DNA of 58,216 bases, the filler included, from Sluysia triapertura (Eukaryota), in NCBI GenBank assembly GCA_046118255.1. It is 4 parts of 4 records of this genome, joined end to end, with 100 filler letters (N's around TTAATTAATTAA, not from the genome) between each part and the next. Parts side by side here need not be neighbours in the genome. Positions count along the whole stretch, not along the records: positions 13,987 to 29,183 come from JBJNIA010235117.1; 3 more parts are not named here. The stretch is one strand, 5' to 3'. Made by a program: the position numbers and the translations under genes. Of this stretch, positions 6,470 through 26,450 are shown one piece after another; within the stretch, counting starts at the first letter, position 1, and each line of letters begins with the position of its first letter. The notes under the pieces are model-generated. The model saw only the letters and a list, made by a program, of their open reading frames with translations, had not been told where the DNA came from and searched no databases.

Positions 6470-6734
6470 CATCTTGCATGCGCGGTAAACTGTCCACTAA
6501 GTGTCTGCAAGTTCTAGCAGGTAAATCTTTAGATCCCGTCGGCTTGATGATACTGGCCATACCGAGATGATGGGCTATCGCAGCTTCGTCGGATACCGTT
6601 TGCATAGTTAAAGCATTGGGAACCCCAGGCGGGCCTTGAGGACCTGGCGGACCCATGTTGCCAGGAGGACCTGGTGGTCCGCGTTTACCATCTACTCCTG
6701 GCAAACCTGGTGGGCCTGCGGGGCCAGTTTCACC
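6470..6734 (-). CDS. Fibrillar-type collagen, exon C: end of triple helix, telopeptide and start of C-propeptide (COLFI)
   Basis: 13 Gly-X-Y triplets, then ...[16 protein letters not shown]...DG, matching the PxGSxxxPARTCxxL start of the fibrillar collagen C-propeptide. Phase-1 donor G|gttaga. Later exons were not found in the window. Confidence 0.9.
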
Positions 6735-6772
6735 CTGAAAATATTATTAACATTCAAATAACAATAAATAAC

Positions 6773-7384
6773 AGTGTAGCCTATTTCTCCTTGGAGACCA
6801 TCAACACCGACAGGACCTTGCACGCCAGGTAGCCCAACGCGACCCGGATATCCAGCTGCACCTTTCTCACCTTTATTACCCATTATTCCTGGATCTCCAT
6901 CTGCCCCAGGAGGTCCGGTAATTCCTTTCCACCCAGGCAAACCAGGTCGGCCAGGACTTCCTTGTACTCCAGTTGCACCATTTTCACCTGCTCTTCCTGG
7001 ATTACCCATTGGTCCTTGGTCTCCAGCTATACCTAGTTTTCCAGGTTCTCCAAGTTCTCCTGCTGGACCGGGCTTCCCAACTGGTCCTGGAGGTCCAGCT
7101 TCTCCCTCAGGCCCTGCTGGTCCCTTAGGACCAATATCTCCACTGGGACCTTGCAGTCCAGGATTACCTCGAGAACCTGCAGGGCCTGGTGGACCTTGTT
7201 CTCCCTCATTTCCTTCTTTTCCGATAGGCCCTATTTCCCCCATAGGACCCGGTTTGCCTGGCGGTCCTTGTAATCCAACTGGACCGTCCTCACCAAGTTT
7301 ACCCGGCGCTCCGGCGGCCCCTGGTAGACCACTTGGTCCTATATTTCCTATCGAACCTGGAGTTCCAGGAGCACCTTGTTTTCC
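6773..7384 (-). CDS. Fibrillar-type collagen alpha chain, internal exon B (204 codons)
   Basis: Uninterrupted Gly-X-Y. Acceptor cttcag|GGA, donor ACT|gttatt. Followed by a 38-nt GT-AG intron (6735-6772) that explains the frame change between the two track ORFs. Confidence 0.93.
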
Positions 7385-8004
7385 CTGAAGTAAAAAATCA
7401 AAAGATCCAATTAAATATGATGCAATACATTTTTGAATTTTTAGACAAATATAATTATTTGTGTATAACTAGTTTCTCCATTTTCATCACAAGTTACGAA
7501 TAAATAAGAATGAGAAAGTATAAAAACAAATAATAAAATCAATTTCGACCTGAAATACTCTTCGTGCTGCTGCATACATGCGTGTGGGCAGCGAATGACC
7601 ATGACACAGCTTTCTCTTCTAATCTTAAGATGAAGCTCGTATTGATCTTTTGCGTAATAAAATGCTGAAGATTTTACTTACATTCGAGGAGGATGGACTG
7701 TTAACATGCTAATTAGGGAGGAGGAAGTTATCTAATTATTTCTGTCGCAGCAACAGTTATCAAGACACAAATAATTGTCTTCCATCAGATAACGTATTGT
7801 TAGTGTGTTCATGACGACATTGTTTAAAAAAGAGAGACACTCCTTAAGAATGATACCAACGAGAGATCATTTATCAGCATGGTTAACGTTTTTATAATTG
7901 GCTGGTTATGTTATTACACAACATATCTTATTTAAACAAGATCGCAACACAACCACGATGCGGGGAGTCGCTGTCCATCTTTATTGAGACACAATAAGAC
8001 ATTA

Positions 8005-8200
8005 TAATTATTATTTTATTATCATTATTATAATTATTTAATTATTATCATAATTATTATTACAATTATTATTATTAGTAGTATTAATATTAATTAGTAG
8101 TAATAGCAGTGGTAGCAGCAGTAGTAATAGTAGTCGTAGTAGTAGTAGTAGCAGTAGTAGTAATAGCAGTAGTAGTAGTAGTAGTAGCAGTAGTAGTTAG
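8005..8200. repeat. (TTA)n grading into (TAG/CAG)n microsatellite in collagen intron
   Basis: Directly visible trinucleotide repeats. Confidence 0.9.
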
Positions 8201-8299
8201 AATGGTAAAGAACACAAGAATGAACAATAACCACCACGAGTTGCAATGATGTAAATGTTAATATTCTAGACAATATTTGATTGCTTGGTTTTAGTTTGG

Positions 8300-9500
8300 T
8301 CCACTTATCACTCTAAATTTCGATGTATTTATTACATAAGTTAAAACTTGTTCTTACAAAATGAAGTGCTAAATCCAATATCTTTTCAAAAATATCGATG
8401 TTTCGAATATAGTTGCTACTGGAATAATAAGAATAATATTTTTTGCATCTTTAAATTTATGTTTACTAGTTGATATTAAAGATGATGAGCCAATTGGTTG
8501 TTATTGAACCATTTGGAATTTAAGAACGAATTTGAATATCTAATAACAAATGAATATGAAGACGGATGTTAGCAAGAGCACTTTTTATCAGGTCATACTG
8601 GAAATACCTCATGTTTAAAGCATTATTGTCAGAATGTTTTAGTTCTGGATTACGTTTCTTTCAACACGAATAGCGAATAAGCGATATTTATTGAAATTAA
8701 ACTTTATTTCATTGTTTACTCGTTTTAAAATAATTAGACGCATCATTTGTCCATTCAAGACGAATAATAAATCTCCATCATTACTCCACCTTTTTGATGA
8801 TGAATTTCATTATTGTCTAATGACAATGGACCATGAATAGCGTTTAATGTTCGCATTTCTTGACTCAATGTGACGACCAACACGAGGGATATGTTTCAGA
8901 GAGCTTTAGGCATTAGTTAGTCGCATACATTTGTAATTTAGAAATAATAAAGGTATGTGGAATTGATTGCTTGTCTTTGAACATGATTATGATTACAAAA
9001 TTTGCTAAATGTTTCTCTTTGTTTCATTGTCTTACTTTTGAGTGGTCAAATTCCACACGATTTTACATAAATAAAAAACAAAATAAATTAATTTATTCTG
9101 AAGTATAAAATGTATGAGAACTATGAAATGGAATATATATTTGATCTTTTGCACGATCACTTCACAAACTATTTGGTATTTGCGTATCGGATCTGGATAT
9201 CTGGTGTAGGAATGTTTAAAGGGATAATGCTATACATTGTGCGAGTATTTAAGTGAATGGTACATGACCAATAAGGAATTATTTAGTGATTTCTAGACGT
9301 GTGATAAGAAGTGAAATTGCTGAATTAAGTTGTAGTAATATTTTAATATGAGCTGGCTTTGTAAGGTGTGAATTTTATATGGTGTTCTGTAACTCTGAGA
9401 TGAATCTAATTCAAATATTGTATTCACATGAATTGTTTGAGCTTGTGGATGATTCATAGGATGAATTTATCAAGTGTATTGTTATTGTTAACGCCATCAT
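8300..9500 (-). mobile_element. Possible highly decayed non-LTR retrotransposon remnant in collagen intron
   Basis: Minus-strand fragments resemble a degenerate zinc knuckle (PSCWSSHxVKKC) followed by KGGVMMEIY (APE endonuclease GGV-like). Many stops; weak. Confidence 0.25.
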
Positions 9501-9709
9501 TTCGTATTTATGTAGTCTGACTGTTTTAGATTATTTAAATAAAAGTTAATTTTTTATTTTAAATTAATTTTTATTTATATAAACAAAAATACTTCAATTT
9601 ATTTCTATTAAGAAACTAAAATGATGGAACAATTGCAGAAATGTGTCGACCACTGCATACAAATCATTAATTTCTTACTTAATCAATAATAAATATTCGC
9701 AATACTAAC

Positions 9710-10408
9710 CTGTACCCCTGGGGATCCGTCCCGACCTGGTCGACCAGTAACACCTTGCTCTCCTCGCATTCCGATTGGGCCAACAGGTCCCATTTCACCT
9801 TGAGTACCGTCTCGACCATCTGGACCTGCTATACCTACCTTTCCAATTGGGCCTCTTGGTCCATCAAATCCAGGTTTACCAGAAACTCCGTTAGATCCTT
9901 GGGGACCATCTGGACCCTGCTTTCCGCGTTGTCCTCGAGATCCAGCTGCACCAGGTAATCCACGTGGGCCTTCGTCTCCTGGATTTCCGGGAATACCCTG
10001 CTTACCTGGAGTTCCAGGATTACCATCAAGTCCAGATTTGCCAGGTTTTCCAGGTACTCCATCTTTACCAACAGGACCTGGAGGCCCCTGAGAACCATCT
10101 GGACCTGGTGGACCAGGAGGACCCTTGACACCAACCAAACCAACCTTACCTATAATTCCTGGCAGACCCGAACGACCTGGTTTTCCAGGATATCCTTTAT
10201 CACCTGCTTTTCCCGGCAATCCAGGGGACAGACTTGCACGAGAACTTACTCTAAGAACTGGGCCTTGCATGCCTGGGCTACCAGGGGGTCCAGGTGGGCC
10301 TGCTGCACCTGGTAATCCCGGATTTCCGTCAGTAGCTGATTTGCCTTTAGTACCCTTCTTTCCTCGACTACCTGACAAACCAGGAGAACCTACTGTTCCA
10401 GGAAGACC
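9710..10408 (-). CDS. Fibrillar-type collagen alpha chain, internal exon A (233 codons)
   Basis: Gly-X-Y frame bounded by acceptor ttgtag|GGT and donor CAG|gttagt (phase 0). Contains the non-helical interruption [11 protein letters not shown]. Confidence 0.93.
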
Positions 10409-11029
10409 CTACAATGTAACATCGAAAGTATTATTAAGTCTTTTCGTTATGATAATAATAATAATAATTTGATAATGATTAATGATTAACATATACAATT
10501 AAAGTAGTTATTATTCCAAAATCAATATTTACTTCATTTTCGAGCATTATATACATAAATCTTTATTATCACTCATTGCGCTCTAGAATCAACAATGTCT
10601 GTAGTGAACTCAAAATTAAAACACTACAAATGTAAATACAATCACTAGCACACACCAACACAAATTAACACATCTTAAACAAAATACTGAACAAATTTCA
10701 ACAAACAAGATGCATGAAACACAAACCCAATCATAATATCATGGACATTTTAGAATTTTTATCAAAATTTAAGATTCATGTTATTTATTGTTGTTGATGT
10801 TGTTGTCATTTAAATAATATAATGTTTTAGCCACTTCTCATGTATCTTTTATATGTTACCTATTGTTTTATTTATCATTTATTTCAATTTTGTTATAATT
10901 ATTAAATTTTATTAATCCTTATATTACTTATTGTTAATTTAAAACTTAGTTTTGATAAGTATTTAAATTTTGTAAGACTTAATTATTTTTTTGCATTAAA
11001 ATGTGGCAAAATTGAAATAAGGACGGAAT

Positions 11030-11895
11030 ATAATAATGTAATATATACGATCGCATATTCATGTAAATTCGGTATTAAATTACGCATTCTTTTTATGAAG
11101 TCTATCTATTCTGTTCCATTATTCGGTTTTCTCTTTTTTACTACTTATTTCCATTTCGAAGAAGCATTTTCAATGGTGTTTAAAAATGAAGAATAAGGAG
11201 GTAAAATCAAACTCGACGTTTCTCGCTCTAAACAAATCTCACATTATCCATTATGAACAATATTCTTTCTCTATTTTTTCCTTTACTTTTTGTCGATCAT
11301 GTTGTTAAGGAATTGAATGTAGGACGGGGAATTAAAAGCAAAATCTTGGGATTTCTATGCGAGATTTCTGATTGGAAAATTGCACACCATACCGATACAT
11401 TTCTCGACCTTATTTGTGGCACAACAATAACCGCAAGCGAATCAGCTTCAGATGTCTTCATTGAAACGTTGAACCTTGTCTCATCGAAGAAAATATCTAT
11501 GTTCGATACTGCAAAAATCTTCTTGCATAAGCTATTTTCTCATCAATATTTTCTACAGTGCTTGTGAAACTCTTAGTGAATACTTGAAACTCACAATATA
11601 CTTAGCAATTGCAGTTGTAGAAACAGCGATATTAAAAACTTGTTCACATTTACCAACCAAATGTTGATCAACCCACTATTTCAATGTATCTATATTGTCC
11701 TAATTTAATTTTCGCAACACCCTGCACCTTTAGGCCTAGCTTTAGTTTCCCGGTTTTAACATAAGAATCCACAATGGAATAAAGGGTTGATAATTCCACA
11801 TCCATTATACTCGAAATTTCATTCTTTTTCATTCCGGATACACATGCTTTTGTGCCATTTTCTCTTACTTCATTTCTAATGGCTTTTTTAATCAT
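11030..11895 (-). mobile_element. Tc1/IS630-family DDE transposase pseudogene
   Basis: N-terminal HTH-like ORF 11668-11895, then minus-strand motifs IFFDETRFNVSM, IMDNVRF and ILPPYSSFLNTIENASSKWK, interrupted by frameshifts and stops. Confidence 0.88.
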
Positions 11896-12079
11896 TTAAT
11901 ATAGGGTAATATAAACCTTATAAACTTCAAAAATAGTACAAGATTCTTAAAAATATTTAAAAATAAGGGTTGAAACCCTGCTGTATCTAGCATAAATAAA
12001 TGAAAACAGTTAGTAATATTGTATCATATGTGATCAACAATTCGAACCATTGTGTGTGTGTAGTAGTAGTAGAGTTATA

Positions 12080-12253
12080 CTGTAAAACTTCTTTTATTCC
12101 CCAGGGAAATAACCATTTCCTCATAAATTTTTAATGGTGGGAAATGTTACAAGTTTTCTTAAAAGTTATTTTCCTTCAATAAAGATATAAACAAGGTGGG
12201 AAAATAAGAAATTGAGAATGATTATAGATTAAAAAATAAAAGAAGTTTTACAG
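12080..12253. mobile_element. 174-bp MITE, Tc1/mariner superfamily type
   Basis: Perfect 19-bp TIR CTGTAAAACTTCTTTTATT / AATAAAAGAAGTTTTACAG flanked by TA on both sides. Confidence 0.85.
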
Positions 12254-13746
12254 TAGTAGTAGTTGTAGTTGTGGTGTCTCAGTTATATCCTGTACTTTTA
12301 TTCCCACGTACAGTCACATACTTACATAAAAGTCATTCGCTAATACTCTTGACATTTCACAATCTCAACTCACATCACAAAATTCAAAAATCAAAAATCA
12401 AAAAAAATCTCCAACACATAAACTATTAAAATAAACTATTATTATAAATTATGAATGTTGGTTCCGCTGATATCGCTTTTCTAATTTGTCTCAACATAAT
12501 TTCCTGTTTCGTCCTCTTTCTATTAGTATGTATGTTTATTTATTTGTTTGTATTTTATCTCTGAAGAGAAGAAATTTCGTGCTGAAAACATATTGAATAA
12601 TTATCCTGATAAATCATGGAAGGTGAACAATGAAATGACAAATTGAGAAGAACTTTCATCGAAATACAATTCACAGAATTAATTGATATTGAAGAAATGG
12701 AACTCAGAAATTGTGGATAAGCTTTTATCGAAATTCAGACGTCTCGTTCACGCGATTCAAATGAAAATTATCAAGTGTCGATGATTTCTACAGTACTTAT
12801 ATCATCATTAGAGTCTCATAAATTATGATGGGGCTGATGGAATTAGAAGGATTGATACAAAAAATTTTTACTTGTACAATATCTAACCAAAAACGGGACA
12901 GAGTTAAATTAGACTGTAATCAACTTTTCAATAACAATATTCAATTAAGTTTGAATTATGTAAAAATTTTAAGAAAGGAAAAGAAATTAATTTTTTGTTT
13001 AAATATACTATTTTTTAATTAAAACCTTACTTTTGAAAAAGTTATCACTACTTCTACAATGCTGAATTTAAAATCGAATGGAAATTCTTTCAGATTTATT
13101 ACTTCTTCTATCGATAACAACGATTATGAGGAGACTAACGATGATCACAATGACGATGATGATTATTTTATTGAACAAGCTATTTTCAAGCAGTAAAACT
13201 CGATGGAACTAAGCTTGTGGAAAGATTTCCGAGTTAATTTCGTGACTTTGGTGCAAAATATGAACGAACGTTTGATGAAAGAAATCGATGACAGGTCGAA
13301 GTTAAAACTAACTACTGAATTGCATTCTATGGAAATTGAAGATGAATGTAATGCGCTCGCAGTAAGTTATGGTGAATAGTTAAATTTGAAGTTGTCTCTC
13401 CAGATGTTTCTAGATAGAAGGCACAATTGCAGTTTATGTTCTGGATTTGGACTTGGTCTTGACTTTAATGCGGTGAATCTAATTCAAGAAGAAAATACAT
13501 GTGAAACGATGACACATCATTTACTTTTATTTAAAATTTTAAAAAGGTAATCAATGCAAGAGAACATGGTCATTGTTACGAAAACAAATCATTTGATGGG
13601 GTTTCATCCTTCATCACTGTTTCTGTAATACTCAATTTTGAATCTAACGCAAATTGTTTTAGATCTCTCATTTTGTTTATTATGATAATGACTATGAGGA
13701 GACTCATGACTACGATGATGATGATTTTATTAACAATAATGTTGAA

Positions 13747-13986: not shown

Positions 13987-15331
13987 TTTTATTTATAATA
14001 TTGATAAAGTAGAAATCATAATATAAACTTAAAAAACATAAAAAATTGAAAAACGTTAATTTTCTAAAAAAAATTAAAAATTCAACTTAGTGTGATATAG
14101 GTATCAAACATACACATGCGAGCGCATACTGGCGCACACTAAATTCGAACGAGCATACAATAAATATGCACTAAGCTCTGTGAAATACAAACTTGCAAGA
14201 AGGTATCGCTCCAGATAAAAATATAAACACAATATTTATAAGTGGCGAGAGGTACTCGGGATAGCGCAAATCGGAACACATTTGATGCGCGAGAGTCTCC
14301 TTCGAGATTCTTAAGTGGTTAAAGAAAAAAATACAAGCAAATTATATTGACAAAACAGAAGCTTAGTTTTAGTTTATTGGAACTTAATTAGTTTATGATC
14401 ATTATATCACTAATGTTTATCACTACTTTATAGCGTCACTTATGCAATAATTATTTCACTTGTCTTCGGTAATGATCGCAATAGCTTCAATGTCAGTCTT
14501 ATTAATAGTGAAGAAAATGATAGTCAAAAATTTTTTGAATATAATTCTTAGCTATACTTAAGTTACACTTATTAATTTCTACGTTATTTTCACTATATTT
14601 CATTTTGTAGTTAAAAATAGTGTGTGGTCTTACTCTACATATTTTAATGATTATGTAGTCAATTTCTTATGCATAGTTAATATCATTCTGTATTAAAATT
14701 TAGGTTATCTGCCTTGTTAGCTTTTTTAATATTTGTAATGAGTATAGAGTGATTTTTCATACCAGAACAATGATGGAAAAATGTTTGTTAATTTGTGTAT
14801 GTTAATGATTACTATCATTTTGTGTTTTTGAGTTACTGTGTTTCTGTTCGATCAGCATTTATTTTTTGGCTAGTTGGTAGGTCTCTCTACATTCTTATTT
14901 TATTTTCACTTTCCTTCATTTTAAGTTTCATAATTTGCACGAATTAAATTATTTAAAGTTACTTTTGTTTTAAAATTGAATTTTATAAACTTATTTTAGA
15001 TTCATATGTGAGTATAAAATAAATTAATAGAATTTATAAAATAAATAGAATTAATAAATTAATAAATTCTTGAACTGGGTGTTAAAATGATTTTACATTT
15101 TCATTGTTTCATATTTTATATGTAAACAGTTTAACAATAAACTGTCCTTAAAAACTCAAAAAAGGGCATCCGTTTTCTAGAATATTGGATATAAAAAGTG
15201 GTGAATTAAAATTTAACACGACACCTTGAAATGACATTTTATTGTTAATAAACTGTACTTTATTTATGAAATGTGCAGTACATTTGTATTTTTAATCTTA
15301 TACAATATTTTAAAAATATTATTAAATTTAG

Positions 15332-15583
15332 AAAGATCATAAATTCACATGTATCTATAAATGCGGTTATGCTTGTGTCAAACAAAACTTTCTCGCAACA
15401 CACTACAAAGAAGAACATTCAGTTAATAATGAAGTAAAACAGTCGAAAAGCTCAAATATTCATAGAAGTTCATGCACATGTGAATTGTGTGGTATAACTT
15501 TTAATCAAGCATCTCTTAAAATACGCCATTTTTTTCAGAAACATTATCGAGAATGTTTTGTGGCACTTGAGTATTTATCGTGA
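15332..15583 (+). CDS. Terminal exon with two C2H2 zinc fingers (gene may be a pseudogene)
   Basis: After the tttag acceptor: KDHKFTCIYKCGYACVKQNFLATHYKEEH...CELCGITFNQASLKIRHFFQKH...stop. The candidate upstream exon (about 15131-15277) contains two in-frame stops. Not in the ORF track. Confidence 0.72.
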   Translation, partial: KDHKFTCIYKCGYACVKQNFLATHYKEEHSVNNEVKQSKSSNIHRSSCTCELCGITFNQASLKIRHFFQKHYRECFVALEYLS

Positions 15584-15985
15584 TGCGTAATTCCACTTCC
15601 TTTTAAATTTGTATAGAATATATAATTAACAATAATAATTTCATTAAGAAAAATCAATTACTTTTTCTATCGAGTGATTTTTTAATCTCGTATGCATTTA
15701 AAACTCAATGTATTATTATTATTATTATTATTATTAATTTTTAGTATTATTATTAATTTTTATTAATATTATCGTTAATTTTTATTAATATGATTATTAT
15801 TATCATCATCTTTATTATTATCATTATTTTTATTATTATTTATTTTATTATAAGTATTTTTGTTTTAATTTATGTTAATTTATGTTGTACTATTTTTAGT
15901 AACCTTAGGGTTCTAAAAATACTTTCAAAGGTAAATTTGAAATTTTTTAAAAAATACTTTTAAGATTTTTTAGTGCTTTATTTGA

Positions 15986-16828
15986 ATGGACAGAACCAAA
16001 TATGTTGTTTTGGATAGACCTGATAGATCGCTAAAGGCACATTCATGTGATGATTCGATGGAGATGTTATTTAAAACTTTATCAGAGCAACTGAACGACG
16101 AAGGAGACTTGGCAGACTTAAAAGATGTATTACTTAAAGACCTAAAAGATGTATTAGCTAAACATTTAAAAGATGTATTACTTAAAGACCTAAAAGATGT
16201 ATTAGCTAAACATTTAAAAGTTGTATTAGTTAAAGATTTAAAAGACGCATTAGTTAAAGATTTAAAAGACGTATTAGTTAAAGATTTAAAAAATGTATTA
16301 GATAAAGATTTAAAAGATGTATTAGATAAAGATTTAAAAGGTGTATTAGTTAAAGATTTAAAAGATGTATTAGTTAATAACGACTTGACTTATTATTTCC
16401 ATTTTTATAATGTATCGATATATTTGTACCCCCATTTTGTTAAATATTATGAAGTTTATCTTTGTATTCAGTTTCATTTTCAAAAAAATAATATACACAG
16501 TTTAGAACGTCCGTCACCAACTTCTCATCTGGCAACTGATGGCATAAACATTTACAATTCTATTCATCTATTGTTTGATACTTGTTTTTATGATGAAATG
16601 TATGGGCTTTTGGAGCCTAAATTAGATTTTTATAAACTTTTGTATAATTCTAATCTCAAATTCGATTTTTCGTATAAATATATTAACGTTATTCATTATT
16701 TTCCTTACATGATTTTGAATATTTCAGAAACAATAAATTGTAACTATTTTAAAACAATAAGTAGTAGTTATAAATCTTATTTTTTCATTAATATAAATAA
16801 TAAACCCCGGTCATCTGATCCTCTTTGA
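15986..16828 (+). CDS. Hypothetical 280-aa protein with 11 octapeptide repeats (DLKDVLxK)
   Basis: 843-nt open frame in very AT-rich DNA, preceded by a 43-nt GT-AG intron-like segment (15931-15973). The stop codon lies inside the tRNA fragment. Confidence 0.55.
   Translation: MDRTKYVVLDRPDRSLKAHSCDDSMEMLFKTLSEQLNDEGDLADLKDVLLKDLKDVLAKHLKDVLLKDLKDVLAKHLKVVLVKDLKDALVKDLKDVLVKDLKNVLDKDLKDVLDKDLKGVLVKDLKDVLVNNDLTYYFHFYNVSIYLYPHFVKYYEVYLCIQFHFQKNNIHSLERPSPTSHLATDGINIYNSIHLLFDTCFYDEMYGLLEPKLDFYKLLYNSNLKFDFSYKYINVIHYFPYMILNISETINCNYFKTISSSYKSYFFININNKPRSSDPL
16115..16378 (+). repeat. 24-bp in-frame tandem repeat, 11 copies
   Basis: Consensus GATTTAAAAGATGTATTAGTTAAA, contiguous, no spacers. Confidence 0.95.
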
Positions 16829-16906
16829 GGGCGTGGGTTCAAATCCCACTCCTGACACCATTGTAAAGATGGCCGGGCTTTATTATTTATATTAATAAAA
16901 AAATAA
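16777..16906. repeat. 40-bp inverted repeat (37/40) with a 50-nt loop holding the tRNA fragment
   Basis: 16777-16816 versus 16867-16906. Confidence 0.92.
16813..16860 (+). pseudogene. 3' half of a tRNA-Leu with genomically present CCA
   Basis: TCTGA (anticodon stem 3' side), variable arm CCTC-TTT-GAGG, T arm GTGGG-TTCAAAT-CCCAC, acceptor strand TCCTGAC, discriminator A, then CCA. This matches the 3' end of eukaryotic Leu CAA/CAG tRNAs. The D arm and anticodon are absent upstream. Confidence 0.85.
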
Positions 16907-18449
16907 ATACTACGAATAATTCTAGATCAGTAAATAATTCTAAGCAAAATAATAAACTACGTCTATACATCTGTAATTAATTTCGTCGATTATATTAATA
17001 ATTCTCCAACCTGAAATTATAAAAATAATTAAAAAATTAATAATATATCTATGAAAAATAAAAACTGAGTGATAATGAAAACGACAATGAAGACTTTGAA
17101 ATTTGTGAAAATTATGAATGTATTTTTATTTTATTTATTTAAATTAGCAAAATCATTTTTAGTAGATTATAGTGAATAAACTAATATTTTGTCTAACATT
17201 GTTATTAAACTATTTTTACACATTTGAACTCAAACTCCTAAATCTGCAAGATTAAATTGTAATGAACTGAGATCTGATCAATTATGTTTAGTAATCACTT
17301 ATGTTAAAGAATGCGGACTAGATCCCACATTGAATAAATTACAACTTGAAATTTTAAAAAATTTAACATTCCATTACCAAGATTAGATTATACTAAATCG
17401 CAACACAATTTCAGTGACTATCTGTCAATTATATCGAGTCTTCGGATTTATTCGAGTACGGTATTGTACATAGTTTTGATCCTCTATCTTAAAAATAAAT
17501 TAAATTCGTTTTTGGTTAATATATTGTTATTTAAGTTCTTTGCAATTTTAAAAGAAATTAAATCGATTAAATTTGTTAATTTAAAAATTAAAGTGTTGAT
17601 AGTTATTTTTTCAAAGTTTATTCACGTTTTTCAATTTTAAATGCACTAAACCTAAAATTCTCTCATAACTATAATAATATTAATATAATTAAGATAGAGC
17701 TTCGAGGACAAAACACTCTCCTTTTGTTTTTGAAGAGGCCAATAAACTATTTGATCTTTTTGAATAATTGCAGAGATATAAATTTCTAATATTCAACGAT
17801 CCTTTACTTATTGTTCCAGAAGAGAATTTCATTGTCCTTTACTTTTCCATTTCAAAAGAAATCGTAAGTAATTTATGTTAAGGTTTATTTCCTTAAACAA
17901 AATTAAGGATAAGCAAAATTAATCTAAATATTCAATTTTATAATTTATTATATCATAACTATTTTGATATAGTTAATTGTAGTTAATTGCGCTTGTTAAT
18001 TGTAGTTTGTAATATATCTGTTGGTTTTTTATTGCTCTAACAATAATCTTTGTTAAAATTAGGTAATTTATGCACGATAAACAAAGTTTTCTGATAACCT
18101 AAAATTAAGTAATATCAACAAAAATAGGACAAAGTATCCGCATCATATTATGCATAAAGAATAAAGTGAAAAGATTTTACCCTCAGATTAATATTTAATT
18201 TAGTGAATACATTCATAAAAATCCAATAAACCACATCTTTCCCACAGGATACAAAACATTATAGGTGGACCCACCAATGACATTTTATAAGTAACAAATA
18301 TAGAAAATATTTGCAATGAAAATAAAACATTTGTTTGGCGACGGCTGCTAAACCAGATTACATTATAAATTCTAATAAATCATCCATGCTTTCTGAAGAC
18401 ACTAAAGCAAATATTTTAAAAGTCTGCTTAGTAATATTTTAGGTTTTAA

Positions 18450-19000
18450 ATGCACACATAAAGTTCAAAAACTTCTGCAACATTAAATTTATTAGGTTGA
18501 TCTGGATTAGACATATATAAAATACATCTATGATAAATACAAATATTTGATGTATTCATTTTTTGATAATAAACAATGAAACAAAGTAAACAAAGAGTCT
18601 ACACAAAGTTTGCGTCCAATAGAAACAATATGCTTAAAGGCATTTTTGTGGTAATGTTTTATTGTATTTTAATAATAAATGTCTGCAAGGGCGCATATAA
18701 TATATTATTATGAAACTATAAAATCTATTTAATTTTTCAAAACAAACTACTCTATTCTGGTGCTTAAGGCACTTCATTTGAAATTTACTTCTACAATTAC
18801 TAAGAAAATTCAAAATATAAGATCCAAATCCTTTATATTTATTAACAACGTGTACTAAAAAATCTATGAAATTTTGTTTCGCATTTATAATCATAAACAA
18901 AATTTTACAGTTCATATGATTGAAGGAATATAACACAACAGCATTAATTTTAAAATTCTGAGTTTTCCTACCTGTGCCGTCCTTTTGAACATCCTATATC
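18450..19000 (-). mobile_element. Possible decayed piggyBac-type transposase
   Basis: Minus-strand fragments CRSKFQM, CALADIYY and GRKLCVDSLFT occur in the order of the piggyBac core motifs (GRxxFxQY, DxxxYY, GxxxxxDNxFTS). Heavily degraded. Confidence 0.35.
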
Positions 19001-19496
19001 AATCCATTTAACAAAACCAAATTCACTGACTCCTACATTTAAAACCGTTTCTGAACTTTGGCCTTTTGTAAAACCATTATCATCTTGTAAACCTCGATAC
19101 AAAACGGATATATCTGCCGTTCCATGCAAACTACTTCATATAACGAACGTTTTATCAACGAATAATTTAAAATTAACGTACCGTTTATAAGATTGTTTCT
19201 AATGACACTTTTCGAGGTTTCTTCATCCATTCATTCATACTTCAACAGGTTAAAAGTTACACCACAAATCTTCAAAAGAAAATCATTTTAATGAGCATTT
19301 ATTAAAGAGTTAAAATCATAAATAAATTTAGTAACACTAAACTTATTATTCATGACAGATATTTAGTCAAAAAAACTCTTTTAGTTCAAAACATCGAAAA
19401 GATAATTCACCAAATTTGATTGATTTAACAATTTTTTAAATTATTTAATAATTAATTGAAAACGAATTAAGTTCTTTATCTTTATTCAGCAATATA

Positions 19497-20183
19497 CAGT
19501 TATTTCTCTCAAATTGGTCAACCTGGGTTTTTAAATTTTTTGGCTAATTTGAGAAGAACTATTTGAAAAAAACTTTTAAAATTAATATAATTTTTAAACT
19601 TATGAGAATTCTGAGGTATCCATAATGAAAAAACGAGGTATAGTGTTTTTTAGTGAAATTTGGTGAGAAATATGATCTATAATTAAATTGGAATATATTA
19701 AAAAGGTGAATTACGGACTCAGTTTTATTTCGTATTAAAAAAAATAAAATTCCCTATTCCTGGCGTTCTTTCTTATCTTTATCATATCTATAGCAAGTTA
19801 TCGAATGTAAAAGTTCGTATTCAAATTTCTGTTTATTTCTGGATATTTGAGAGCTACGATGGATTTGTGTGACTTGTTTTTGCAATCTCTACCAAATTTT
19901 CAGAATTTTTGAGTAAGTTATTGACAGTTCTCCTTGATATATCTACATTAAATTTTGTAGAAAAAACTGTTGCAATAAATTGACAACTTCTACCCTCATT
20001 ATTTTTTTATACTGGATGATTTGAATTTTCTGCTCTAAAGTCAATCTTGTACAATTTTTTGGTCTATTTTTCGCCATATTATTTGGCCAATTTAAAAATT
20101 TAAACAAAAATTTAAATATAAACAAAATTTCAAATTTTTTATAAAATTAATTGTTAACTTGGCCAATTTGAGAGAATGTACTC
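19497..20183 (-). mobile_element. Internally deleted pogo/Tigger element
   Basis: Imperfect TIRs (CAGTTATTTCTCTCAAATTGGTCAA / TTGGCCAATTTGAGAGAATGTACTC) flanked by TA. CENP-B-type HTH start MAKNRPKNCTRLTLEQKIQIIQY. Confidence 0.75.
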
Positions 20184-20709
20184 TATTAAGATTTATATTT
20201 TATTTAAATCTTAAAATTTAAATCATTTATTTCTGAATGAAGGAATTTAGATAACAAACTTAATAAATAATACAAAGGGCATTGACCAAATCATACTATT
20301 ACTTATTGTAAACTCTAATAAATGTTTGTTTTTGAATAATTCTTATTATAACATGGATACAAGTAATGAATTTATAGGAGGCAACCTACATTCATATTAG
20401 GGTATCAGAGTAAGATTTATTAAAATGTATTCTATCCGAAGAATAACAATAACCTCGATATTAAATAACTTTTAAAATGTTTTTGTTTTTCATTAAATGC
20501 CATTTCAAAAAATCATACTATTCAGAATGATATAGTTTGCGAGATATTGTATAAGAATGCATATGTACAAGAACGATATGTGATATCCTTAAATTTACAC
20601 CTAGATATGTTGAGTAACCAAGACAATCACAATAGCTAATAATAATTTGATATTTTCATGCGTTTTATGATTACCTAATTTATTCTTACTTACGATTGGT
20701 TTAACTTAA

Positions 20710-20897
20710 CATTATACGTACCACGACCAGCCAAATGACCATTTTTAGTTTTACTTTATAAAAATACTAAAATTGTATTGTTTTTTACCATTTAATAACA
20801 TGACTTTTAATTTTATATGTAATTTTATATATAGGTACCGGTAAAATGACCGCTGATGATATGAATAAGTATAAATCAAACCTTGGTACGTAAAATG
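20710..20897. mobile_element. 188-bp piggyBac-type MITE
   Basis: TIR CATTATACGTACCA / TGGTACGTAAAATG flanked by TTAA on both sides. Confidence 0.7.
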
Positions 20898-21110
20898 TTA
20901 AGTATTTAAAAATTGTTTTATTTAATGTCAGATTTTATTTTATAAAGGCGGATATTTTATAAAATAAATTAAGCCGATGATTTAAATAAATCTTAATTGA
21001 TTTAAATATCTAAAATTTATTAAGGATATTTTATTTATTCACTGTACATATTTTATAATATATAAAGTTAAAAATTATATTTCAGGATTAATATAACTTC
21101 ACATTTTAAA

Positions 21111-21781
21111 ATGTTTAAAGTTCTGAAATTTTTTTTGAAATTCAATAAAGTTAATTTTCATGTAAGGTACTATTATAGTTTGTACATTGATTTTAGGAAA
21201 ACTTTGGTATATTATTTGATATTGATGGGGTTTTAATAAGAGGAACACAACCAGTAAAAGAAGCTGGTTACATGTTTGAATTTCTTTACAATAATGGTTA
21301 TTTGAATAAAATACCACTTGCATATTTAACAAATTCTTGTGATCCACCTCAAGAGAAAGCAAAGTTTTTGTCTAACTTGTTTAATACAAAGGTAATAATT
21401 TTTCGTTTTAATATAGGTTTAATTTTTTATTTTTATTAGATATCACCAGATCAAGTGATAAATGCACCTGCTCCTCTTAAATTATATACCCATCTTCATA
21501 ATAAAAGGACCTTTTTTGTTACTCAGGATGAACCAAAAGAAGTTTCTCAAACGTAAATTTACAAAATTATGAATTGAAATGTAGTAATAATTTTTAGTTT
21601 AATTATTATTTTGAAATTTAATTTATTTTGGCTTCTATTAATAGTAAATGTTTCATAAATGCAGCTTATAATAGTCATTTAATTATTTAGGCTTAATTTT
21701 ACAAAACCAGTAACATTAGAGGAAATTAAAACAGCATATCCAGTGTTAGATGTTATGAATAAGAAAATAAGGGAAAAACTT
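21111..21781 (+). CDS. HDHD5: HAD-IIA hydrolase, HDHD5/CECR5-like, 5' part (exons 21111-21161, 21197-21391, 21440-21552, 21691-21781)
   Basis: Spliced translation MFKVLKFFLKFNKVNFH|ENFGILFDIDGVLIRGTQPV...YLTNS...|ISPDQVINAPAPL...|LNFTKPVTLEEIKTAYPVLD. HAD motif I (DxDGV) and motif II (LTN) are present. All introns are GT-AG and phase-compatible (35, 48 and 138 nt). 3' exons were not confidently found. Confidence 0.85.
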
Positions 21782-22085
21782 GTTAGTTAGTTTATGAAAT
21801 AATAATACAATTTTTTTTATGTTAAAATAATGAATTTATTTTGTACTTGAAACAGAATAAATATGTATTATTACCGAATGAATTCTTAAATTATTTGCTT
21901 AAGTGTCAATTATTGAAGTTTATATTTTTAAACAATGGATAAAATAGGAATAAATAATTATTCAAGGATAAAATAAATAATGAATAATTAGTTTTACTTG
22001 AAAATGTGCTAAAACTTTATTAGATTAGCGTTATTTTTATTTTTTCACAATTTTTTAAAAGTTGGCATTGGATAAAATTAGTGTA

Positions 22086-23848
22086 CAGTAAACTCCCGAT
22101 TATTCGGGCTAATGATGGTGAGGGTCTGCACGGATAATCGGCAAAATAATAATACAAAATACCAGTATAATACAAAAACAATGAAACTATATTCAATGCT
22201 TTATTAAAAAAATCGGTAATTTTGGTTTGTTGAAGTGAATTTTTCACTGACTTTTTCATATCATCTCGAATTTTTCTTAATGATATTACATCGTTATAGT
22301 CGAAGCTCCACAGATTGACGTATTCTAGTAAAGTATCGACAGAAGTCACTGTCGTGTCGTGACTGATACTATTGGTAATATCATCTACTTTCATTTAGAT
22401 TTGAAATTAGATATGAAGTAATATCCGTGTCACTCTGTATCTGGAATCCTGGATCAGATGAATCAAATTCCATCAATTTCTCAATAATTTGGTCATCAAC
22501 ATTTTCAAAGCCATTTAAATTTTTCATTAGTTCACGTAATTCTGAAATATCCCAGATTCAATAGAGTCCGAAACATTACTTTCTACATTTGACAAAATTT
22601 TCAACCACGATCGAACTAGTGTCATTGGCTTAATTTTGTTCCAAGATTTATATTACATCCAACAATGTCATTTTTTTCCACAAAAGCTTCTAAGGAGATC
22701 ATTGCGTTTCATTAAAGCGATAACTCCTTGTTCTGTAGGTTGAATTAAAGGTGTTGCATTAGGTGGTAAAAATTTTGCATCTATAAGGTCGTCTATGTTT
22801 TCAGTATGCTTTCATTTGGATGACAAGGAGCATTATCTAATAACAGTACTTCCTTCTGTGGCAATCATTTACTTTAAAAAAAACTAGAATTTCAGGGACC
22901 TTTATCTTTAAACCAATGTTCAAAGATCCTTCTGTCCATCCATGCTACTTTTTGATTGTAGTATTCAACAGGATGATTATTTATTTATGTTCCTTTAAAT
23001 GATCTTGGCTTTTTTACTTTTACAATCATGAGAAGTTCCGATGTGTTGCTACAGCGCATGATTGTGATACGTTATTTAGATGATTTATGGCCTAAAGTTC
23101 TATGATTCATTAAACGAAGCAAGTGTCTTTGTGAGCAAGCACTTCCAGTCTCGTCGGCATTATATATTGGTCTGGTTTCAAATCATTTGCTTGAACATAT
23201 TCCCCAAATTCAATCCGGAATTTAGTAGCGGCGTCAACATGCTCACGGATACCATGACGTTTCTTAAATCCGGTTAGCCATCTAGAAGATTCGTTAAAGT
23301 TGTTTTTTAATCCCAATGAATCATAAAAGATTTGGCTTTATGTGCAATTAGCATTCCTTCTGCTCGTTTTTGATTTAAGCATAGCTGTATCTAAATCTTC
23401 ATATGATGACATTTTCATACTTTTCCGAGTTGAAGCACTTGCATTACTATCACAATCTCTTGTAAACTCCTCAAATTTTCTTTTTTGCTTAATTATATCG
23501 CGAACTGTTTGAGCACCAACTCCGTATTCTTCCGAAAGTTCGATGTGGATTTACCCTTTTCACTCATTTCAATTAACTGAAGTTTTTGTTTCAGTACGAT
23601 TATTTGATTGTACGATTGTTTCGCAATTATTTGACATTGCGATAGGGTATTTTTCTAAAATAATTTAAAATTTAAAATAATTTAATTTTAATTAAAATTT
23701 TTATTATCATAAAGTATTTTAAACCTAAAAAAAATAAACAATACATACCGGTAAATCAATAACAAATCAATAAAATTAAAATTGTGCTTCTTAAAAAAAT
23801 AGATGCGTATTTTCTAAATATTATCCACGGATAATCGAGAGTTTACTG
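22086..23848 (-). mobile_element. Full-length decayed Tigger/pogo DNA transposon
   Basis: 21-bp TIRs CAGTAAACTCCCGATTATTCG / CGGATAATCGAGAGTTTACTG (2 mismatches), TA on the left. Transposase fragments LSEEYGVGAQTVRDIIK, SSRWLTGFKKRHGIR, LLLDNAPCHP, FLPPNATPLIQP and QTKITDFF. Confidence 0.92.
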
Positions 23849-25449
23849 TTTATAGTTTAAGTTATAAAGCTATTTTCCCGTTAAAAATATAAATGAATTT
23901 TTACCATTTCAGAATTTTGTATATTGATATTTCTTGACATTAGTATTTTTAAATTTTCCTTAATAAAACTGTTTTTAAAATAATATATAATGTTTTCTGT
24001 AGCAAAATGTAGGCGTATTCATCTTATCATTTTAAGAAAAGCTAAAAATAATGTTCGTTAAGCGTTTTGTAATTTCAAGAAAATAGTCAAAGCACTAATA
24101 TTTATTCTTTAAGAATTTTTAACTAGTTTTTTTGAATTTCTGGTTCTGGTTATTTTCCTTGACAGTGCATTTTAAAGTTTGGTGCAAGCACTGTACAATC
24201 CTCTTCAATTTTATTTTTACTTATTATTTGCCATTAATTTTGTGTCAGTTTGCAATTGTAATTCATTTCAATTTTATTTCTCAGGTACCTTAAATATCCG
24301 TATATAGTATGCTTATTTCTTTATGGATGATAATCGTGGTGCGCATTATGCAATGGTACAACAGGAAATAATTTTTTTCTTGTTTAGAAAATTAGAAAAG
24401 AATAAATTGTTAATTTTTATTCAAAGAAAATTTTTTCATTATAGAGACCATTATTCTCATATTCACTTTCTGCCAGATTCTCAATTTCAATGAACTCATT
24501 ACCTCCAAACATTAATTCATTTTTTATATATCACTTTGCTCATTCTCTATATCAGATATATTGTCCGCCCAAGTAACGTCATCTGACTCATCAGTAGCAT
24601 TAATCATTGGTTTAGCAATTGTATGAAATGCTTGTACTGAGTAACGATTTTGACAAAGTAAAATAAAATAATGTTATGTAAACTTCTGTTTTTATTATTG
24701 AAGTCTGCTCCAAATTTAAGTTTGATAAGTTCGGTTATAAGTTACTTTAATATTTAGTGAAAGTTTTGCTCTCTTATGTTAATGTTAATTTTAATTTTAC
24801 TACTCGTCTCTGATGTAACAGATGGAAGTTCTAATACTATTCTTCTGTACCATTAAGATAAGTATGTTTGAATCAACGAAGTGATCAAAGGTAGTGGAGA
24901 GACTAGTTTTACTTGCTTAACAAATTCAGATGTAAAATGTTTAACAAGATACTATTATCGTGCAAATTTATCTTAATCTTAGTTATTATTATTGTATTCA
25001 ACAATTCTGATGATTAATTTAATGTTATTAAATTTAACAAGTCGTTTAATAAATTATTAAATTCAATACAAAATCAAATATGACTTTATTTGACTTTAAA
25101 TATTACAAAAATATTTTAATTATTGTAAATAATGTAAATTAGTTTTGTAAAAATTTGTAAATTAGAAAATTTGTAAAAATCAAAGTTATTTAATGATAAT
25201 TTGTAAAAAATAAATTTCTACAAAGTTAAATTATTTAAAATTAATCAGTAAATTAAAAATTTATATTATATTTGATTGACAAAATTTAAAGTATAATATT
25301 TACATTATTTAAGGAAGTTAAAGTATTCCGAATGATTAAATATTTACATTATCTAAATCGTTTGATTAACTAAACTTAAAAATACAAATAAATATCAACA
25401 TTATTCGTTAAAAAAGGAAATAAATAAATAATTTCATTGGCTAAAAACT

Positions 25450-26450
25450 GTATAAAAATGCAGAAATATAGTAACGTTTTAGTAGTAACAGAAGAATCAT
25501 CAACTGTGAATACTGACTGGTCTGTGAAAACCTATTCGTTAGAAAATTAGAATCATTAAATTATTAATCCTGAATTTGTCTTCGGAAAGTTATACGATAG
25601 AAGATTGGAATTGCCATTGATCGCTGTCGAATTTATCTGGAGAATCCTATTGATCAAATTATATCATCACTGTACTAACTGGAAATTTAATGAATAAGTA
25701 TGATATTTATTTTTAAGTTCTGACATTAATATTTTGCCTCAAAATACACATAAATCATCACATTTTTGAAACTCAAGCATTCGCCTGAGTCAAAATCTTA
25801 TTTAAACTGTAAATTTATTAACCAGGATAAATTCGGTGTATAATTTATATTTTGTTTATTCAATGTTTTGATAAATAGATATTTTGTTTTTCGAACTTTA
25901 CGTGTTTTAAGAAGGAAGTTAAAAAATTGATTAGTATTTAATTTTTGTAATTAATCTTTGATTGTTAGTTGGTTAATTAATTTTTAAACGATTATTTGTT
26001 AATTGTATTAAATTATTTGCATACTTTGTTTTGTTGCATAATTCTATAAAGGTTAAAGAATACTTTGTGAAGTTATAAGAAATATTAAGTTAAAAACATA
26101 AATTATCGAAAAATAATTATTAAATTGTTAAGTATCTCGAAATATAATTAATTGACGTAAAAAGTTATTCTAAAGTTATTAGAATAAGTTATTAAAGGAT
26201 ATCACGTTACATTTCATCTAAGTAGTAAGGAACTGTGAGTACGTCTTTCACGTAATATAAATCGTATATCACAGGTGGATCCGCAAGTTTAATAATTTCA
26301 TAATTGTTGCAAACTTAGAGAAAGTTGAACATTATAAAAAATGTAATAAATAATTATGTTAACCAAAATGTTGTTCAGTTGAATTACCTTAGAATGTACA
26401 TTAATTATATAATATTGAAATACTGTCGGTCGGTCCAATTATATTGAAAT
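25450..26450 (-). mobile_element. Probable decayed LTR-retrotransposon gag/protease region, related to 40450-41200
   Basis: Minus-strand FDSGECLSF (retropepsin DSG-like). Shares AAGCATTCGCCTG and colinear patches with the region near 40710. Confidence 0.35.

What the first reader, a model, noticed from the sequence alone, without database searches (positions are those of the whole stretch)
16777..16906. Permuted-looking, CCA-tailed tRNA-Leu fragment enclosed in a 40-bp hairpin
Seen: an intact tRNA-Leu 3' half ending ...TCCTGACA-CCA (16813-16860), then TT, then GTAAAGATGGCCGGG (16863-16877). That second piece matches the canonical Leu 5' start GTCAGGATGGCCGAG at 12/15 positions, so the order is 3' half before 5' start. 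A 37/40 inverted repeat encloses the fragment, and one arm includes the 5'-like piece. Known: eukaryotic nuclear tRNA genes normally lack CCA, and circularly permuted tRNA genes are described in some algae and archaea; I know of none in animals. Inferred options: a cDNA of a circularised or end-joined mature tRNA, a scar of a tRNA-primed or tRNA-targeting element, or a tRNA-like 3' processing module on the mRNA of the upstream ORF. Caveat: the 5'-like piece pairs with the acceptor strand at only 5/7 positions, and the D-arm 3' side and anticodon are missing, so a functional tRNA is unlikely.
Basis: partly seen in the sequence, partly recalled or inferred. Interest (0 to 1): 0.72.

Follow-up and report, generated by a model that had tools for sequence, protein, structure and literature searches.

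The report
Hairpin repeat built from tRNA-Leu pieces
The 130-base hairpin is real, but it is a copy of a short, highly repeated (probably mobile) DNA element whose core comes from pieces of a leucine tRNA, and it is neither a working nor a "permuted" tRNA gene.

Summary
Arms 16777-16816 and 16867-16906 pair at 37/40 around a 50-nt loop (fold -56.8 kcal/mol, z -10).

The loop carries 16814-16857. This matches the 3' exon (positions 39-73) of Drosophila tRNA-Leu(CAA) at 41/44. It is followed by CCA, then TT, then a 16-nt piece that matches tRNA positions 1-16 at 13/16. That piece is the best such match in the 15-kb piece on either strand.

It is not a tRNA gene. ARAGORN and Rfam find none, and the D-arm 3' side, the anticodon and the 5' exon are absent.

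Contigs of three public runs from three organisms pile up on exactly this unit. Summed depth is about 7,600-8,800, against about 9-20 for single-copy neighbours. It falls to 502 at 16776 and to 129 after 16904. So this is a high-copy family bounded by the ends of the inverted repeat. At least 24 further contigs begin to match only at 16814.

Best reading: a MITE-like hairpin repeat whose core is a fossil of reverse-transcribed tRNA-Leu pieces. Every junction sits at an RNA end, at the exon-2 start or at the m1G37 reverse-transcriptase block.

A rival remains open: CCATTGT may be a natural gene flank, because contigs of a second organism show CCATT followed by a T-run terminator. No other copies could be fetched, so the mobilising machinery is unknown.

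The parts
16777..16816 (+). Left arm of the hairpin. The outer 28 nt are pure A/T. The inner 12 nt (CCCCGGTCATCT) are the inverted copy of the tRNA-5'-like piece. The last 3 nt (TCT) are shared with the tRNA part.
   Evidence: I1, 37/40; fold; arm found only here and, inverted, at 16867-16887.
16814..16857 (+). Piece derived from the 3' exon of tRNA-Leu(CAA), positions 39-73. It holds the 3' strand of the anticodon stem, the variable arm (CCTC/GAGG), an intact T arm with a B-box-like GGTTCAAATCC, the 3' strand of the acceptor stem and the discriminator A.
   Evidence: 41/44 to Drosophila CR30508 exon 2 (sequence from PMC4536317); unique in the window; 24 contigs of run X1 start to match at 16814.
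16858..16862 (+). CCA followed by TT. Either the tRNA 3' end added after transcription plus two filler bases, or the start of a natural gene flank (CCATT).
   Evidence: sequence. table 7: X3 contigs read ...CCATT|CTTTT and ...CCATTGT|TTTAAAG. An X2 contig ends at ...TGACA|TATATTTTTGCC.
16863..16878 (+). Piece like the 5' start of tRNA-Leu (positions 1-16, 13/16), including an A-box-like TGGCCGGGC. It lies downstream of the B box, which is the wrong order for pol III.
   Evidence: best hit in the piece on both strands.
16867..16906 (+). Right arm of the hairpin: tRNA-5'-like positions 5-16, then a 28-nt A/T-rich stretch ending in AATAAAAAAATAA.
   Evidence: summed depth falls from 8,774 (16838-16904) to 129 (16905-16971).
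15986..16828 (+). Upstream 280-codon ORF whose stop (TGA, 16826-16828) lies inside the tRNA part. It holds a 24-nt x 11 minisatellite (16114-16377). It is context only and is not shown to belong to the element.
   Evidence: No Pfam family, no homologue, not on record. Without the 130-nt unit the frame would stop 4 codons later anyway (read from the sequence).

Best explanation
16777-16906 is one copy of a short, high-copy, hairpin-shaped interspersed repeat. It looks like a MITE: two 40-bp terminal inverted repeats around a 50-nt core. It does no tRNA work.

The core and the inner ends of the arms come from cytoplasmic tRNA-Leu(CAA). In order they are the 3' exon (positions 39-73), CCA, TT, and the first 16 nt of the tRNA.

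Inferred origin, by reverse transcription:
1. A reverse transcriptase copied an A/T-tailed RNA that began with a Leu-tRNA-like 5' end, and ran to that RNA's 5' end.
2. It added two bases and jumped to the CCA end of a tRNA-Leu or its 3'-exon half.
3. It ran to position 38/39, which is the 5' end of the 3' exon and also the base next to the m1G37 block to reverse transcriptase.
4. The cDNA snapped back on a 3-4-nt microhomology (AGAT/ATCT) and copied its own start, which made the second arm.

The hairpin form, already carrying its three arm mismatches, then multiplied to hundreds of copies. The machinery was not identified. It was either a DNA transposase that recognises the terminal inverted repeats (TA flanks fit) or a LINE reverse transcriptase acting on the A-rich end.

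Shown: the anatomy, the tRNA-Leu(CAA) derivation, the lack of a tRNA gene, and the high copy number with boundaries at the ends of the inverted repeat.

Inferred: the reverse-transcription origin, the snap-back, and the mode of spread.
For: **Anatomy and significance.**

**tRNA derivation.** 41/44 to Leu(CAA) exon 2, and 13/16 to exon 1 positions 1-16, which is the best hit in the piece.

**Junctions at RNA ends.**
- Homology starts at position 39. In Drosophila Leu(CAA) genes the intron sits between positions 37 and 38 (PMC4536317).
- m1G37 of tRNA-Leu stops AMV reverse transcriptase (PMC8062790).
- CCA is present.
- The downstream piece starts at G1.
- A 2-nt filler separates the two pieces.
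- The left arm overlaps the tRNA part by 3 nt.
- tRNA halves are known partners in LINE-made chimeric insertions (bioRxiv 10.1101/2025.02.02.635956).

**Copy number.**
- Summed contig depth in X1 is 7,558 (16771-16837) and 8,774 (16838-16904).
- Depth is 502 at 16776, 129 in the next bin to the right, and 9-20 for single-copy neighbours. An exact 260-nt contig has depth 16.
- No alternative letter reaching 10% is listed anywhere inside the unit, including the three arm-mismatch positions.
- Solving the two bins gives about 7,900 for copies with the left arm and about 860 for copies without it. This fits the 24 contigs that diverge before 16814.
- The same unit is also the most deeply covered part in X2 (up to 159) and X3 (up to 1,823), which are other organisms and other studies.
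Against: - No second copy could be read base by base. The copy-number argument rests on summed depths of short k-mer contigs in 67-nt bins. The tool itself warns that these depths are not copy numbers.
- Real tRNA-Leu genes share 16830-16857 and add depth there.
- No listed contig spans both arms.
- No cluster of loose ends marks 16777 or 16906. This may be because the outer arms are low-complexity A/T.
- X3 contigs read ...TGACACCATT(C/GT)TTTT, which looks like a gene flank with a terminator. AAAGA follows in both X3 and the window. This argues that CCATTGT is genomic and not a CCA tail plus filler.
- The 5'-like piece differs from the tRNA more (3/16) than the 3' part does (3/44).
- No target-site duplication is significant in this A/T-rich setting, and no autonomous partner was found. 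The pogo-like element in the piece has unrelated terminal repeats.
Confidence: 0.5

Rival explanations
1. The family is a SINE-like retroposon, and the hairpin is private to this copy. The family unit would be only 16814 to about 16893/16906: the tRNA 3' exon, CCA, TT, the 5'-like piece and an A-rich tail. It would be spread by a LINE reverse transcriptase. In this copy the left arm would have arisen during or after insertion, by snap-back or twin priming.
For: table 7. Before 16814 lies by far the best-supported loose end: 24 contigs, median 108 unmatched letters, A/T-rich, agreement 0.44, which means different flanks. Three contigs diverge after 16893. The 3' end is A-rich. The 5' end sits at an RNA end or a reverse-transcriptase block.
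Against: The two depth bins do not fit a unit that starts at 16814. The predicted ratio of bin 1 to bin 2 is about 0.45, and the observed ratio is 0.86. If right-arm contigs were cross-laid on the left arm, the three arm mismatches would appear as alternative letters, and none is listed (table 3). The unit has no A box upstream of its B box, so its copies could not be pol III-transcribed SINEs.
Confidence: 0.2
2. DNA-level remnant with a coincidental CCA. The core would be the 3' exon of a Leu(CAA) gene with its natural 3' flank (CCATTGT..AAAGA), having lost the T-run. It might include the start of a closely following second Leu gene. A fold-back or inverted duplication would then have caught it, and it later spread as a MITE or as part of a larger repeat.
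For: table 7. Two different X3 contigs carry ...TGACACCATT followed by CTTTT or GTTTTAAAGA, which is the look of real genes with pol III terminators. The window reads CCATTGT-AAAGA. One X3 contig shows an intron-like ...AATGAGGA|TTCTGGTC boundary, so gene-like DNA copies exist. The boundary at position 38/39 is equally well explained by the intron site.
Against: It does not explain TGGCCGGGC, which matches the tRNA at 8/9 (about 2e-4 by chance within 30 nt). It does not explain why the downstream piece starts in register at G1. A 5-nt spacer between two tRNA genes would be unusual. No 5' exon or intron lies upstream. In X2 the Leu gene flank is TATATTTTT, not CCATT.
Confidence: 0.2
3. A functional RNA module: a permuted or split tRNA-Leu gene, a tRNA-like 3'-end processing signal for the upstream ORF's mRNA, or a hairpin or miRNA precursor gene under selection.
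For: The T arm and the acceptor 3' strand are intact. The stem is long and stable. The ORF's stop lies in the unit. There are weak hairpin-type Rfam matches: mir-548 at 33.9 bits and MIR2646 at 26.9 bits.
Against: ARAGORN finds no tRNA. All Rfam matches are far below their gathering scores (90, 245; mascRNA 16.8 against 42.5). The 5' half ends at position 16. The acceptor pairs at 5/7. The box order is B before A. No RNA run holds the locus. Hundreds of copies argue for a repeat and not a gene.
Confidence: 0.05
4. An assembly or amplification fold-back artefact.
For: No listed contig spans both arms. The best-holding run may be the sample that the assembly came from.
Against: The arms are only 40 nt and carry three mismatches. 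No strand-switch joint is reported at the unit. The unit's letters are supported at high depth in k-mer contigs, and its core is also present in two other organisms' runs.
Confidence: 0.03

Closest known systems
MITEs (miniature inverted-repeat transposable elements), for example the Made1 elements that gave rise to mir-548 hairpins
   Same: About 130 bp, long terminal inverted repeats, no coding capacity, high copy number with boundaries at the repeat ends, TA at both flanks, and a fold into a long hairpin. The best Rfam matches are MITE-type miRNA precursors.
   Different: The core is made of tRNA pieces with a CCA. No related autonomous transposon or matching terminal repeat was found; the pogo-like element at 22085-23849 has different ends. 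The target-site duplication is not significant. A minority of copies seem to start at 16814, without the left arm.
LINE-mediated chimeric retrocopies with tRNA halves, and CCA-bearing tRNA retropseudogenes (bioRxiv 10.1101/2025.02.02.635956)
   Same: A half-length tRNA piece with a breakpoint in or next to the anticodon loop, CCA present, junctions at RNA ends with a short filler, an inverted segment of the kind explained by twin priming or self-priming, and an A-rich 3' end.
   Different: The known cases are single insertions fused to LINE sequence, up to about 21 loci in primates. Here no LINE part is present and the chimera itself is a family of hundreds of copies. The inverted segment duplicates the same 40 nt, not an upstream region.
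Circularly permuted tRNA genes (Cyanidioschyzon merolae type; recalled from my own knowledge, not tested against sequences here)
   Same: The 3' half lies upstream of the 5' start, and the breakpoint is at position 37/38.
   Different: The 5' half is only 16 nt. The D-arm 3' side and the anticodon are missing. CCA is present between the halves. The acceptor pairs at 5/7. No bulge-helix-bulge motif was seen. The element is multi-copy.
Dada DNA transposons that target tRNA-Leu genes (PMC3706591)
   Same: They place a mobile-element end next to a tRNA-Leu half. The insertion site is in the anticodon region (target-site duplication GCGTTCA in Leu-CTG).
   Different: Dada elements lack terminal inverted repeats and are kilobases long. 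Their flanks reconstitute one tRNA gene. Here the order is 3' half and then 5' start, inside the repeat and not outside it.
Primer-binding site of an LTR retrotransposon (tRNA-Leu primer)
   Same: The minus strand reads ...TTTACA A TGGTGTCAGGAGTGGGAT, which has the formal look of an LTR end (CA), a 1-nt spacer and a PBS complementary to the tRNA 3' end.
   Different: Complementarity runs 47 nt, not about 18. No LTR follows: depth drops to 129 right after the arm. There is no direct repeat pair in the piece and no internal gag or pol.

Membership tests
tRNA gene (functional tRNA-Leu) | A complete cloverleaf that tRNA finders or a covariance model can detect | tested here: not met
   ARAGORN finds 0 genes in 13987-29183. 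There is no Rfam tRNA match even at E<=10 on 161 nt.
tRNA gene (functional tRNA-Leu) | A box / D arm and anticodon arm upstream of the B box / T arm | tested here: not met
   Only positions 39-73 are present upstream. The A-box-like piece lies downstream of the B box.
Circularly permuted tRNA gene | The 3' half is followed by a complete 5' half (positions 1-37) that can pair with it | tested here: not met
   The 5'-like piece ends at position 16. The acceptor pairs at 5/7.
Circularly permuted tRNA gene | Bulge-helix-bulge motif formed by leader and trailer, for circularisation by the splicing endonuclease | tested here: inconclusive
   The predicted fold is a continuous 40-bp stem with single mismatches. 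No 3-nt/4-bp/3-nt motif is evident, but no dedicated search was run.
MITE | Terminal inverted repeats that bound a short non-coding unit | tested here: met
   40-nt arms at 37/40 in a 130-nt unit. The similarity stops at the arm ends.
MITE | High copy number, with family boundaries at the terminal repeats | tested here: inconclusive
   Summed contig depth is about 8,000 inside, against 502 at 16776 and 129 after 16904. This comes from binned k-mer contig depths and not from aligned copies. 24 contigs start to match at 16814.
MITE | Target-site duplication typical of a superfamily, and a related autonomous element | tested here: inconclusive
   TA on both sides is automatic here, because TTA...TAA is part of the palindrome. 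ATAAAT on both sides is not significant in 76% A/T DNA. The only transposon in the piece (pogo-like) has unrelated ends.
tRNA-derived SINE | An internal pol III promoter with the A box 30-60 nt upstream of the B box at the 5' end of the unit | tested here: not met
   The B box GGTTCAAATCC is at 16837-16847. The A-box-like TGGCCGGGC at 16870-16878 lies downstream.
LINE-mediated tRNA retrocopy or chimera | A CCA that is not genome-encoded, breakpoints at RNA ends, an A-rich tail and target-site duplications | tested here: inconclusive
   CCA, the G1 start, the position-39 start and the A-rich end are present. The target-site duplication is not significant. X3 contigs suggest CCATT may be a gene flank.
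LTR retrotransposon (PBS region) | An LTR next to an ~18-nt PBS, a second LTR and an internal coding region | tested here: not met
   No direct repeat pair was found. Depth collapses right after the arm. There are no gag or pol ORFs.
miRNA precursor families (mir-548, MIR2646, MIR9563) | A score at or above the Rfam gathering threshold | tested here: not met
   33.9 against 90, 26.9 against 245 and 23.3 against 90 bits.

The most novel reading that the evidence does not exclude
The family is the amplified fossil of a reverse transcript that crossed a tRNA 3'-to-5' junction. The template was either a circularised or end-joined tRNA-Leu, or a CCA-tailed 3'-exon splicing intermediate reached by template jumping. 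The transcript then self-primed into a hairpin. In this way a tRNA-splicing or tRNA-half by-product would have seeded a new high-copy hairpin element in an animal-like, very A/T-rich genome. If transcribed, that element would also be a ready source of hairpin small RNAs carrying a tRNA T-arm at the apex.
Probability: 0.2. Interest if true: 0.65.

Novelty: new variant of a known kind. Interest (0 to 1): 0.4.

Why it matters
If the reading holds, this shows how a by-product of tRNA metabolism can be turned into DNA and then into a successful short hairpin repeat. The by-product would be a 3'-exon half, or a tRNA copied up to its m1G37 block.

It would link three phenomena usually treated apart: tRNA halves, reverse-transcriptase template jumps with snap-back priming, and the birth of MITE-like families.

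It also has a practical use for annotation. Hundreds of CCA-tailed "tRNA-Leu 3' halves" in this genome should be masked as repeats, not scored as tRNA pseudogenes or permuted genes.

If CCATT turns out to be a plain gene flank, the case shrinks to an ordinary MITE that captured a tRNA gene fragment.

Tried and rejected
**Searches for further copies. All came back blank.**
- Exact-pattern scans of viral contigs, metagenome contigs and prokaryotic genome contigs, using the junction, the tRNA+CCA and the arm.
- A protein word search with the open minus-frame translation of the unit.
- A protein word search with the C-terminal part of the upstream ORF.
- An exact look-up of the ORF.
- Sequence strings in full-text papers.

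**Attempt to reach other loci of the same genome.** I searched with a fragment of the pogo-like transposase. The closest relatives sit on 1.2- and 1.9-kb unrelated contigs, so I dropped this route.

**Readings rejected.**
- A larger palindrome around the unit: the flanks score no better than shuffles.
- An LTR/PBS reading of the minus strand: there is no LTR.
- Derivation from the neighbouring pogo-like element: its terminal repeats are unrelated.
- A bacterial-type promoter or terminator scan gave nothing above shuffles at the unit.

Full report
**1. What is there**

The piece (13987-29183) is very A/T-rich, at 20-33% G+C, and it is full of repeats.

At 16777-16816 and 16867-16906 lie two 40-nt arms that are 93% complementary, separated by 50 nt. 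As RNA the + strand folds at -56.8 kcal/mol, against -22.2 +/- 3.4 for dinucleotide shuffles (z -10.1). The - strand folds almost as well.

The inverted similarity ends at the arm ends. The next 200 nt on each side score no better inverted than shuffled or direct.

**2. The tRNA pieces**

As a reference I used the Drosophila tRNA-Leu(CAA) genes printed in PMC4536317. These have an intron between positions 37 and 38.

- Window 16814-16857 matches exon 2 of CR30508 at 41/44 without gaps. It covers the 3' strand of the anticodon stem, the variable arm, the T arm, the acceptor 3' strand and the discriminator.
- CCA follows at 16858-16860, then TT.
- GTAAAGATGGCCGGGC follows at 16863-16878. It matches exon 1 positions 1-16 at 13/16. 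Over 15 nt it is the single best match to that query among all positions of both strands of the piece: 12 matches, with the runner-up at 10. I therefore take it as truly tRNA-derived.
- The right arm starts inside this piece, at tRNA position 5.
- The inner 12 nt of the left arm are the inverted copy of the same piece and share its two derived changes (A5, G14).
- The last three bases of the left arm are also tRNA positions 39-41.

**3. Not a tRNA gene**

- ARAGORN finds nothing in the piece.
- Rfam gives no tRNA match, even with lax filters on 161 nt.
- The only matches are weak, hairpin-type similarities to MITE-like miRNA precursors (mir-548 33.9/90, MIR2646 26.9/245) and to mascRNA (16.8/42.5).
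- The D-arm 3' side, the anticodon and the 5' exon are missing.
- The A-box-like piece lies behind the B box.
- The acceptor would pair at 5/7.

**4. It is a repeat**

Three public runs from three organisms and three studies hold parts of the stretch. All are kept as k-mer contigs, and none is on record as RNA.

Laid on 15900-17900, run X1 gives these summed depths:

| Place | Summed depth |
|---|---|
| 16771-16837 | 7,558 |
| 16838-16904 | 8,774 |
| 16704-16770 | 819 |
| Position 16776 | 502 |
| 16905-16971 | 129 |
| Clearly single-copy neighbours | 9-20 |

An exact 260-nt contig among the single-copy neighbours has depth 16.

No alternative letter reaching 10% of depth is listed inside the unit, although rows supported by a single contig are listed elsewhere. 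In particular, the three positions where the arms mismatch show no alternative. So the depth on the left arm is not right-arm sequence laid the wrong way round.

Let L be the depth of copies with the left arm and E the extra depth from 16814 onward. The two bins give 61L + 24E = 503,367 and L + E = 8,774. Hence L is about 7,900 and E about 860.

This fits the best-supported loose end of the whole stretch. In 24 contigs the match begins at 16814, and about 108 unmatched, mutually different A/T-rich letters lie before it.

I therefore read the hairpin as the predominant family form, several hundred times single-copy depth. A minority of copies start at the tRNA part.

Caveats:
- The tool warns that summed contig depth is no copy number.
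- Real Leu genes share 16830-16857.
- No listed contig spans both arms.
- I could not read a second copy.

X2 and X3 also peak on the unit (up to 159 and up to 1,823). In X3 the shared part is only 16830-16864.

**5. Origin of the core**

Every junction sits at an RNA end.

- The 3' part starts at position 39. This is the start of the 3' exon. It is also one base past G37, whose m1G form in tRNA-Leu arrests reverse transcriptase (PMC8062790).
- The 3' part ends in CCA.
- After two filler bases, the next piece starts at G1.
- The left arm joins through a 3-4-nt microhomology (ATCT/AGAT).

This is what a chain of template jumps followed by snap-back self-priming would produce. tRNA halves in inverted orientation are already known in LINE-made chimeric insertions.

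Against this, two X3 contigs read ...TGACACCATT|CTTTT... and ...TGACACCATTGT|TTTAAAGA.... That is a Leu 3' end followed by CCATT and then a T-run terminator, which is how a real gene looks. The window reads CCATTGT-AAAGA. So CCATTGT may be an inherited gene flank that lost its T-run, and the boundary at 38/39 would then simply be the intron site.

That rival does not explain TGGCCGGGC, or the register with G1. An X2 contig shows a Leu gene with a different flank (TATATTTTT). I give the reverse-transcription origin somewhat less than even odds on its own. The statement that this is a tRNA-Leu-derived repeat and not a gene is much safer.

**6. How it spreads**

This is unknown. Boundaries at the ends of the inverted repeat, and a family-wide fixed set of arm mismatches, favour a MITE-like cut-and-paste element. 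TA flanks are compatible, but they are automatic here.

The A-rich 3' end and the 16814-starting copies favour retroposition.

The degenerate pogo-like transposon at 22085-23849 has unrelated terminal repeats. No LTR, gag or pol is present.

**7. The upstream ORF**

ORF 15986-16828 (280 codons) is longer than any open stretch in 100 shuffles of the piece, where the longest was 148. Of its codons, 88 are a 24-nt x 11 minisatellite.

It has no Pfam family, no homologue and no record. Its region is itself repeated, with depths of 800-13,000.

Its stop lies in the variable-arm part of the unit. Without the unit the frame would end four codons later, so the unit does not truncate it materially. Nothing links the hairpin functionally to this ORF.

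**8. Verdict**

The permuted-gene and processing-module readings are not supported. The "cDNA or scar" reading is partly supported.

The thing is a member of a high-copy hairpin repeat with an unusual tRNA-Leu(CAA) core. That makes it a new variant of known kinds (MITE, tRNA-half retro-chimera). It is of moderate interest, mainly to people who study the birth of mobile elements and the fates of tRNA fragments.

Noticed in passing
window 22085-23849 (- strand): A degenerate, frameshifted pogo/Tigger-like DNA transposon. It has 22-nt terminal inverted repeats (ACAGTAAACTCCCGATTATTCG / CGGATAATCGAGAGTTTACTGT, 91%). ORF fragments hit HTH_Tnp_Tc5 (E 7.5e-4), and the C-terminal fragment ends ...QQTKITDFF. 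The closest database relatives are only 45-60% identical.
   Followed up: partly
window 16114-16377: A 24-nt minisatellite of 11 copies (87% matches). It encodes an LKDLKDVL(V/A/D)K repeat inside a 280-codon ORF with no homologue. It is by far the deepest part of the stretch in X1 besides the hairpin (up to 13,008), and it is also present in X2 and X3.
   Followed up: partly
window 16498-16643 and 16775-16802: One X1 contig (359 nt, depth 179) joins 16642 directly to 16775 and then leaves the window sequence after 28 nt. So in another repeat context the outer A/T part of the left arm sits next to 16642, without the 132 nt in between and without the tRNA core. An exact 126-nt contig (16518-16643) has depth 242. 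Not explained.
   Followed up: no
window 16906/17021: A contig at single-copy depth (12.6) joins 16906, the last base of the right arm, to 17021 and skips 114 nt. This could be an allelic or paralogous deletion that begins exactly at the end of the unit.
   Followed up: no
window 17173-17640: A moderately repeated, diverged family. There are many alternative letters, each carried by 3-26 contigs, and about ten different internal deletions of 71-179 nt among X1 contigs.
   Followed up: no
window 15711-15870: A (TAT)n microsatellite of about 46 copies, just upstream of the ORF.
   Followed up: no
window 19943-20125 (- strand): A second, weak pogo-type fragment (CENP-B_N, E 0.041), separate from the 22085-23849 element.
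   Followed up: no
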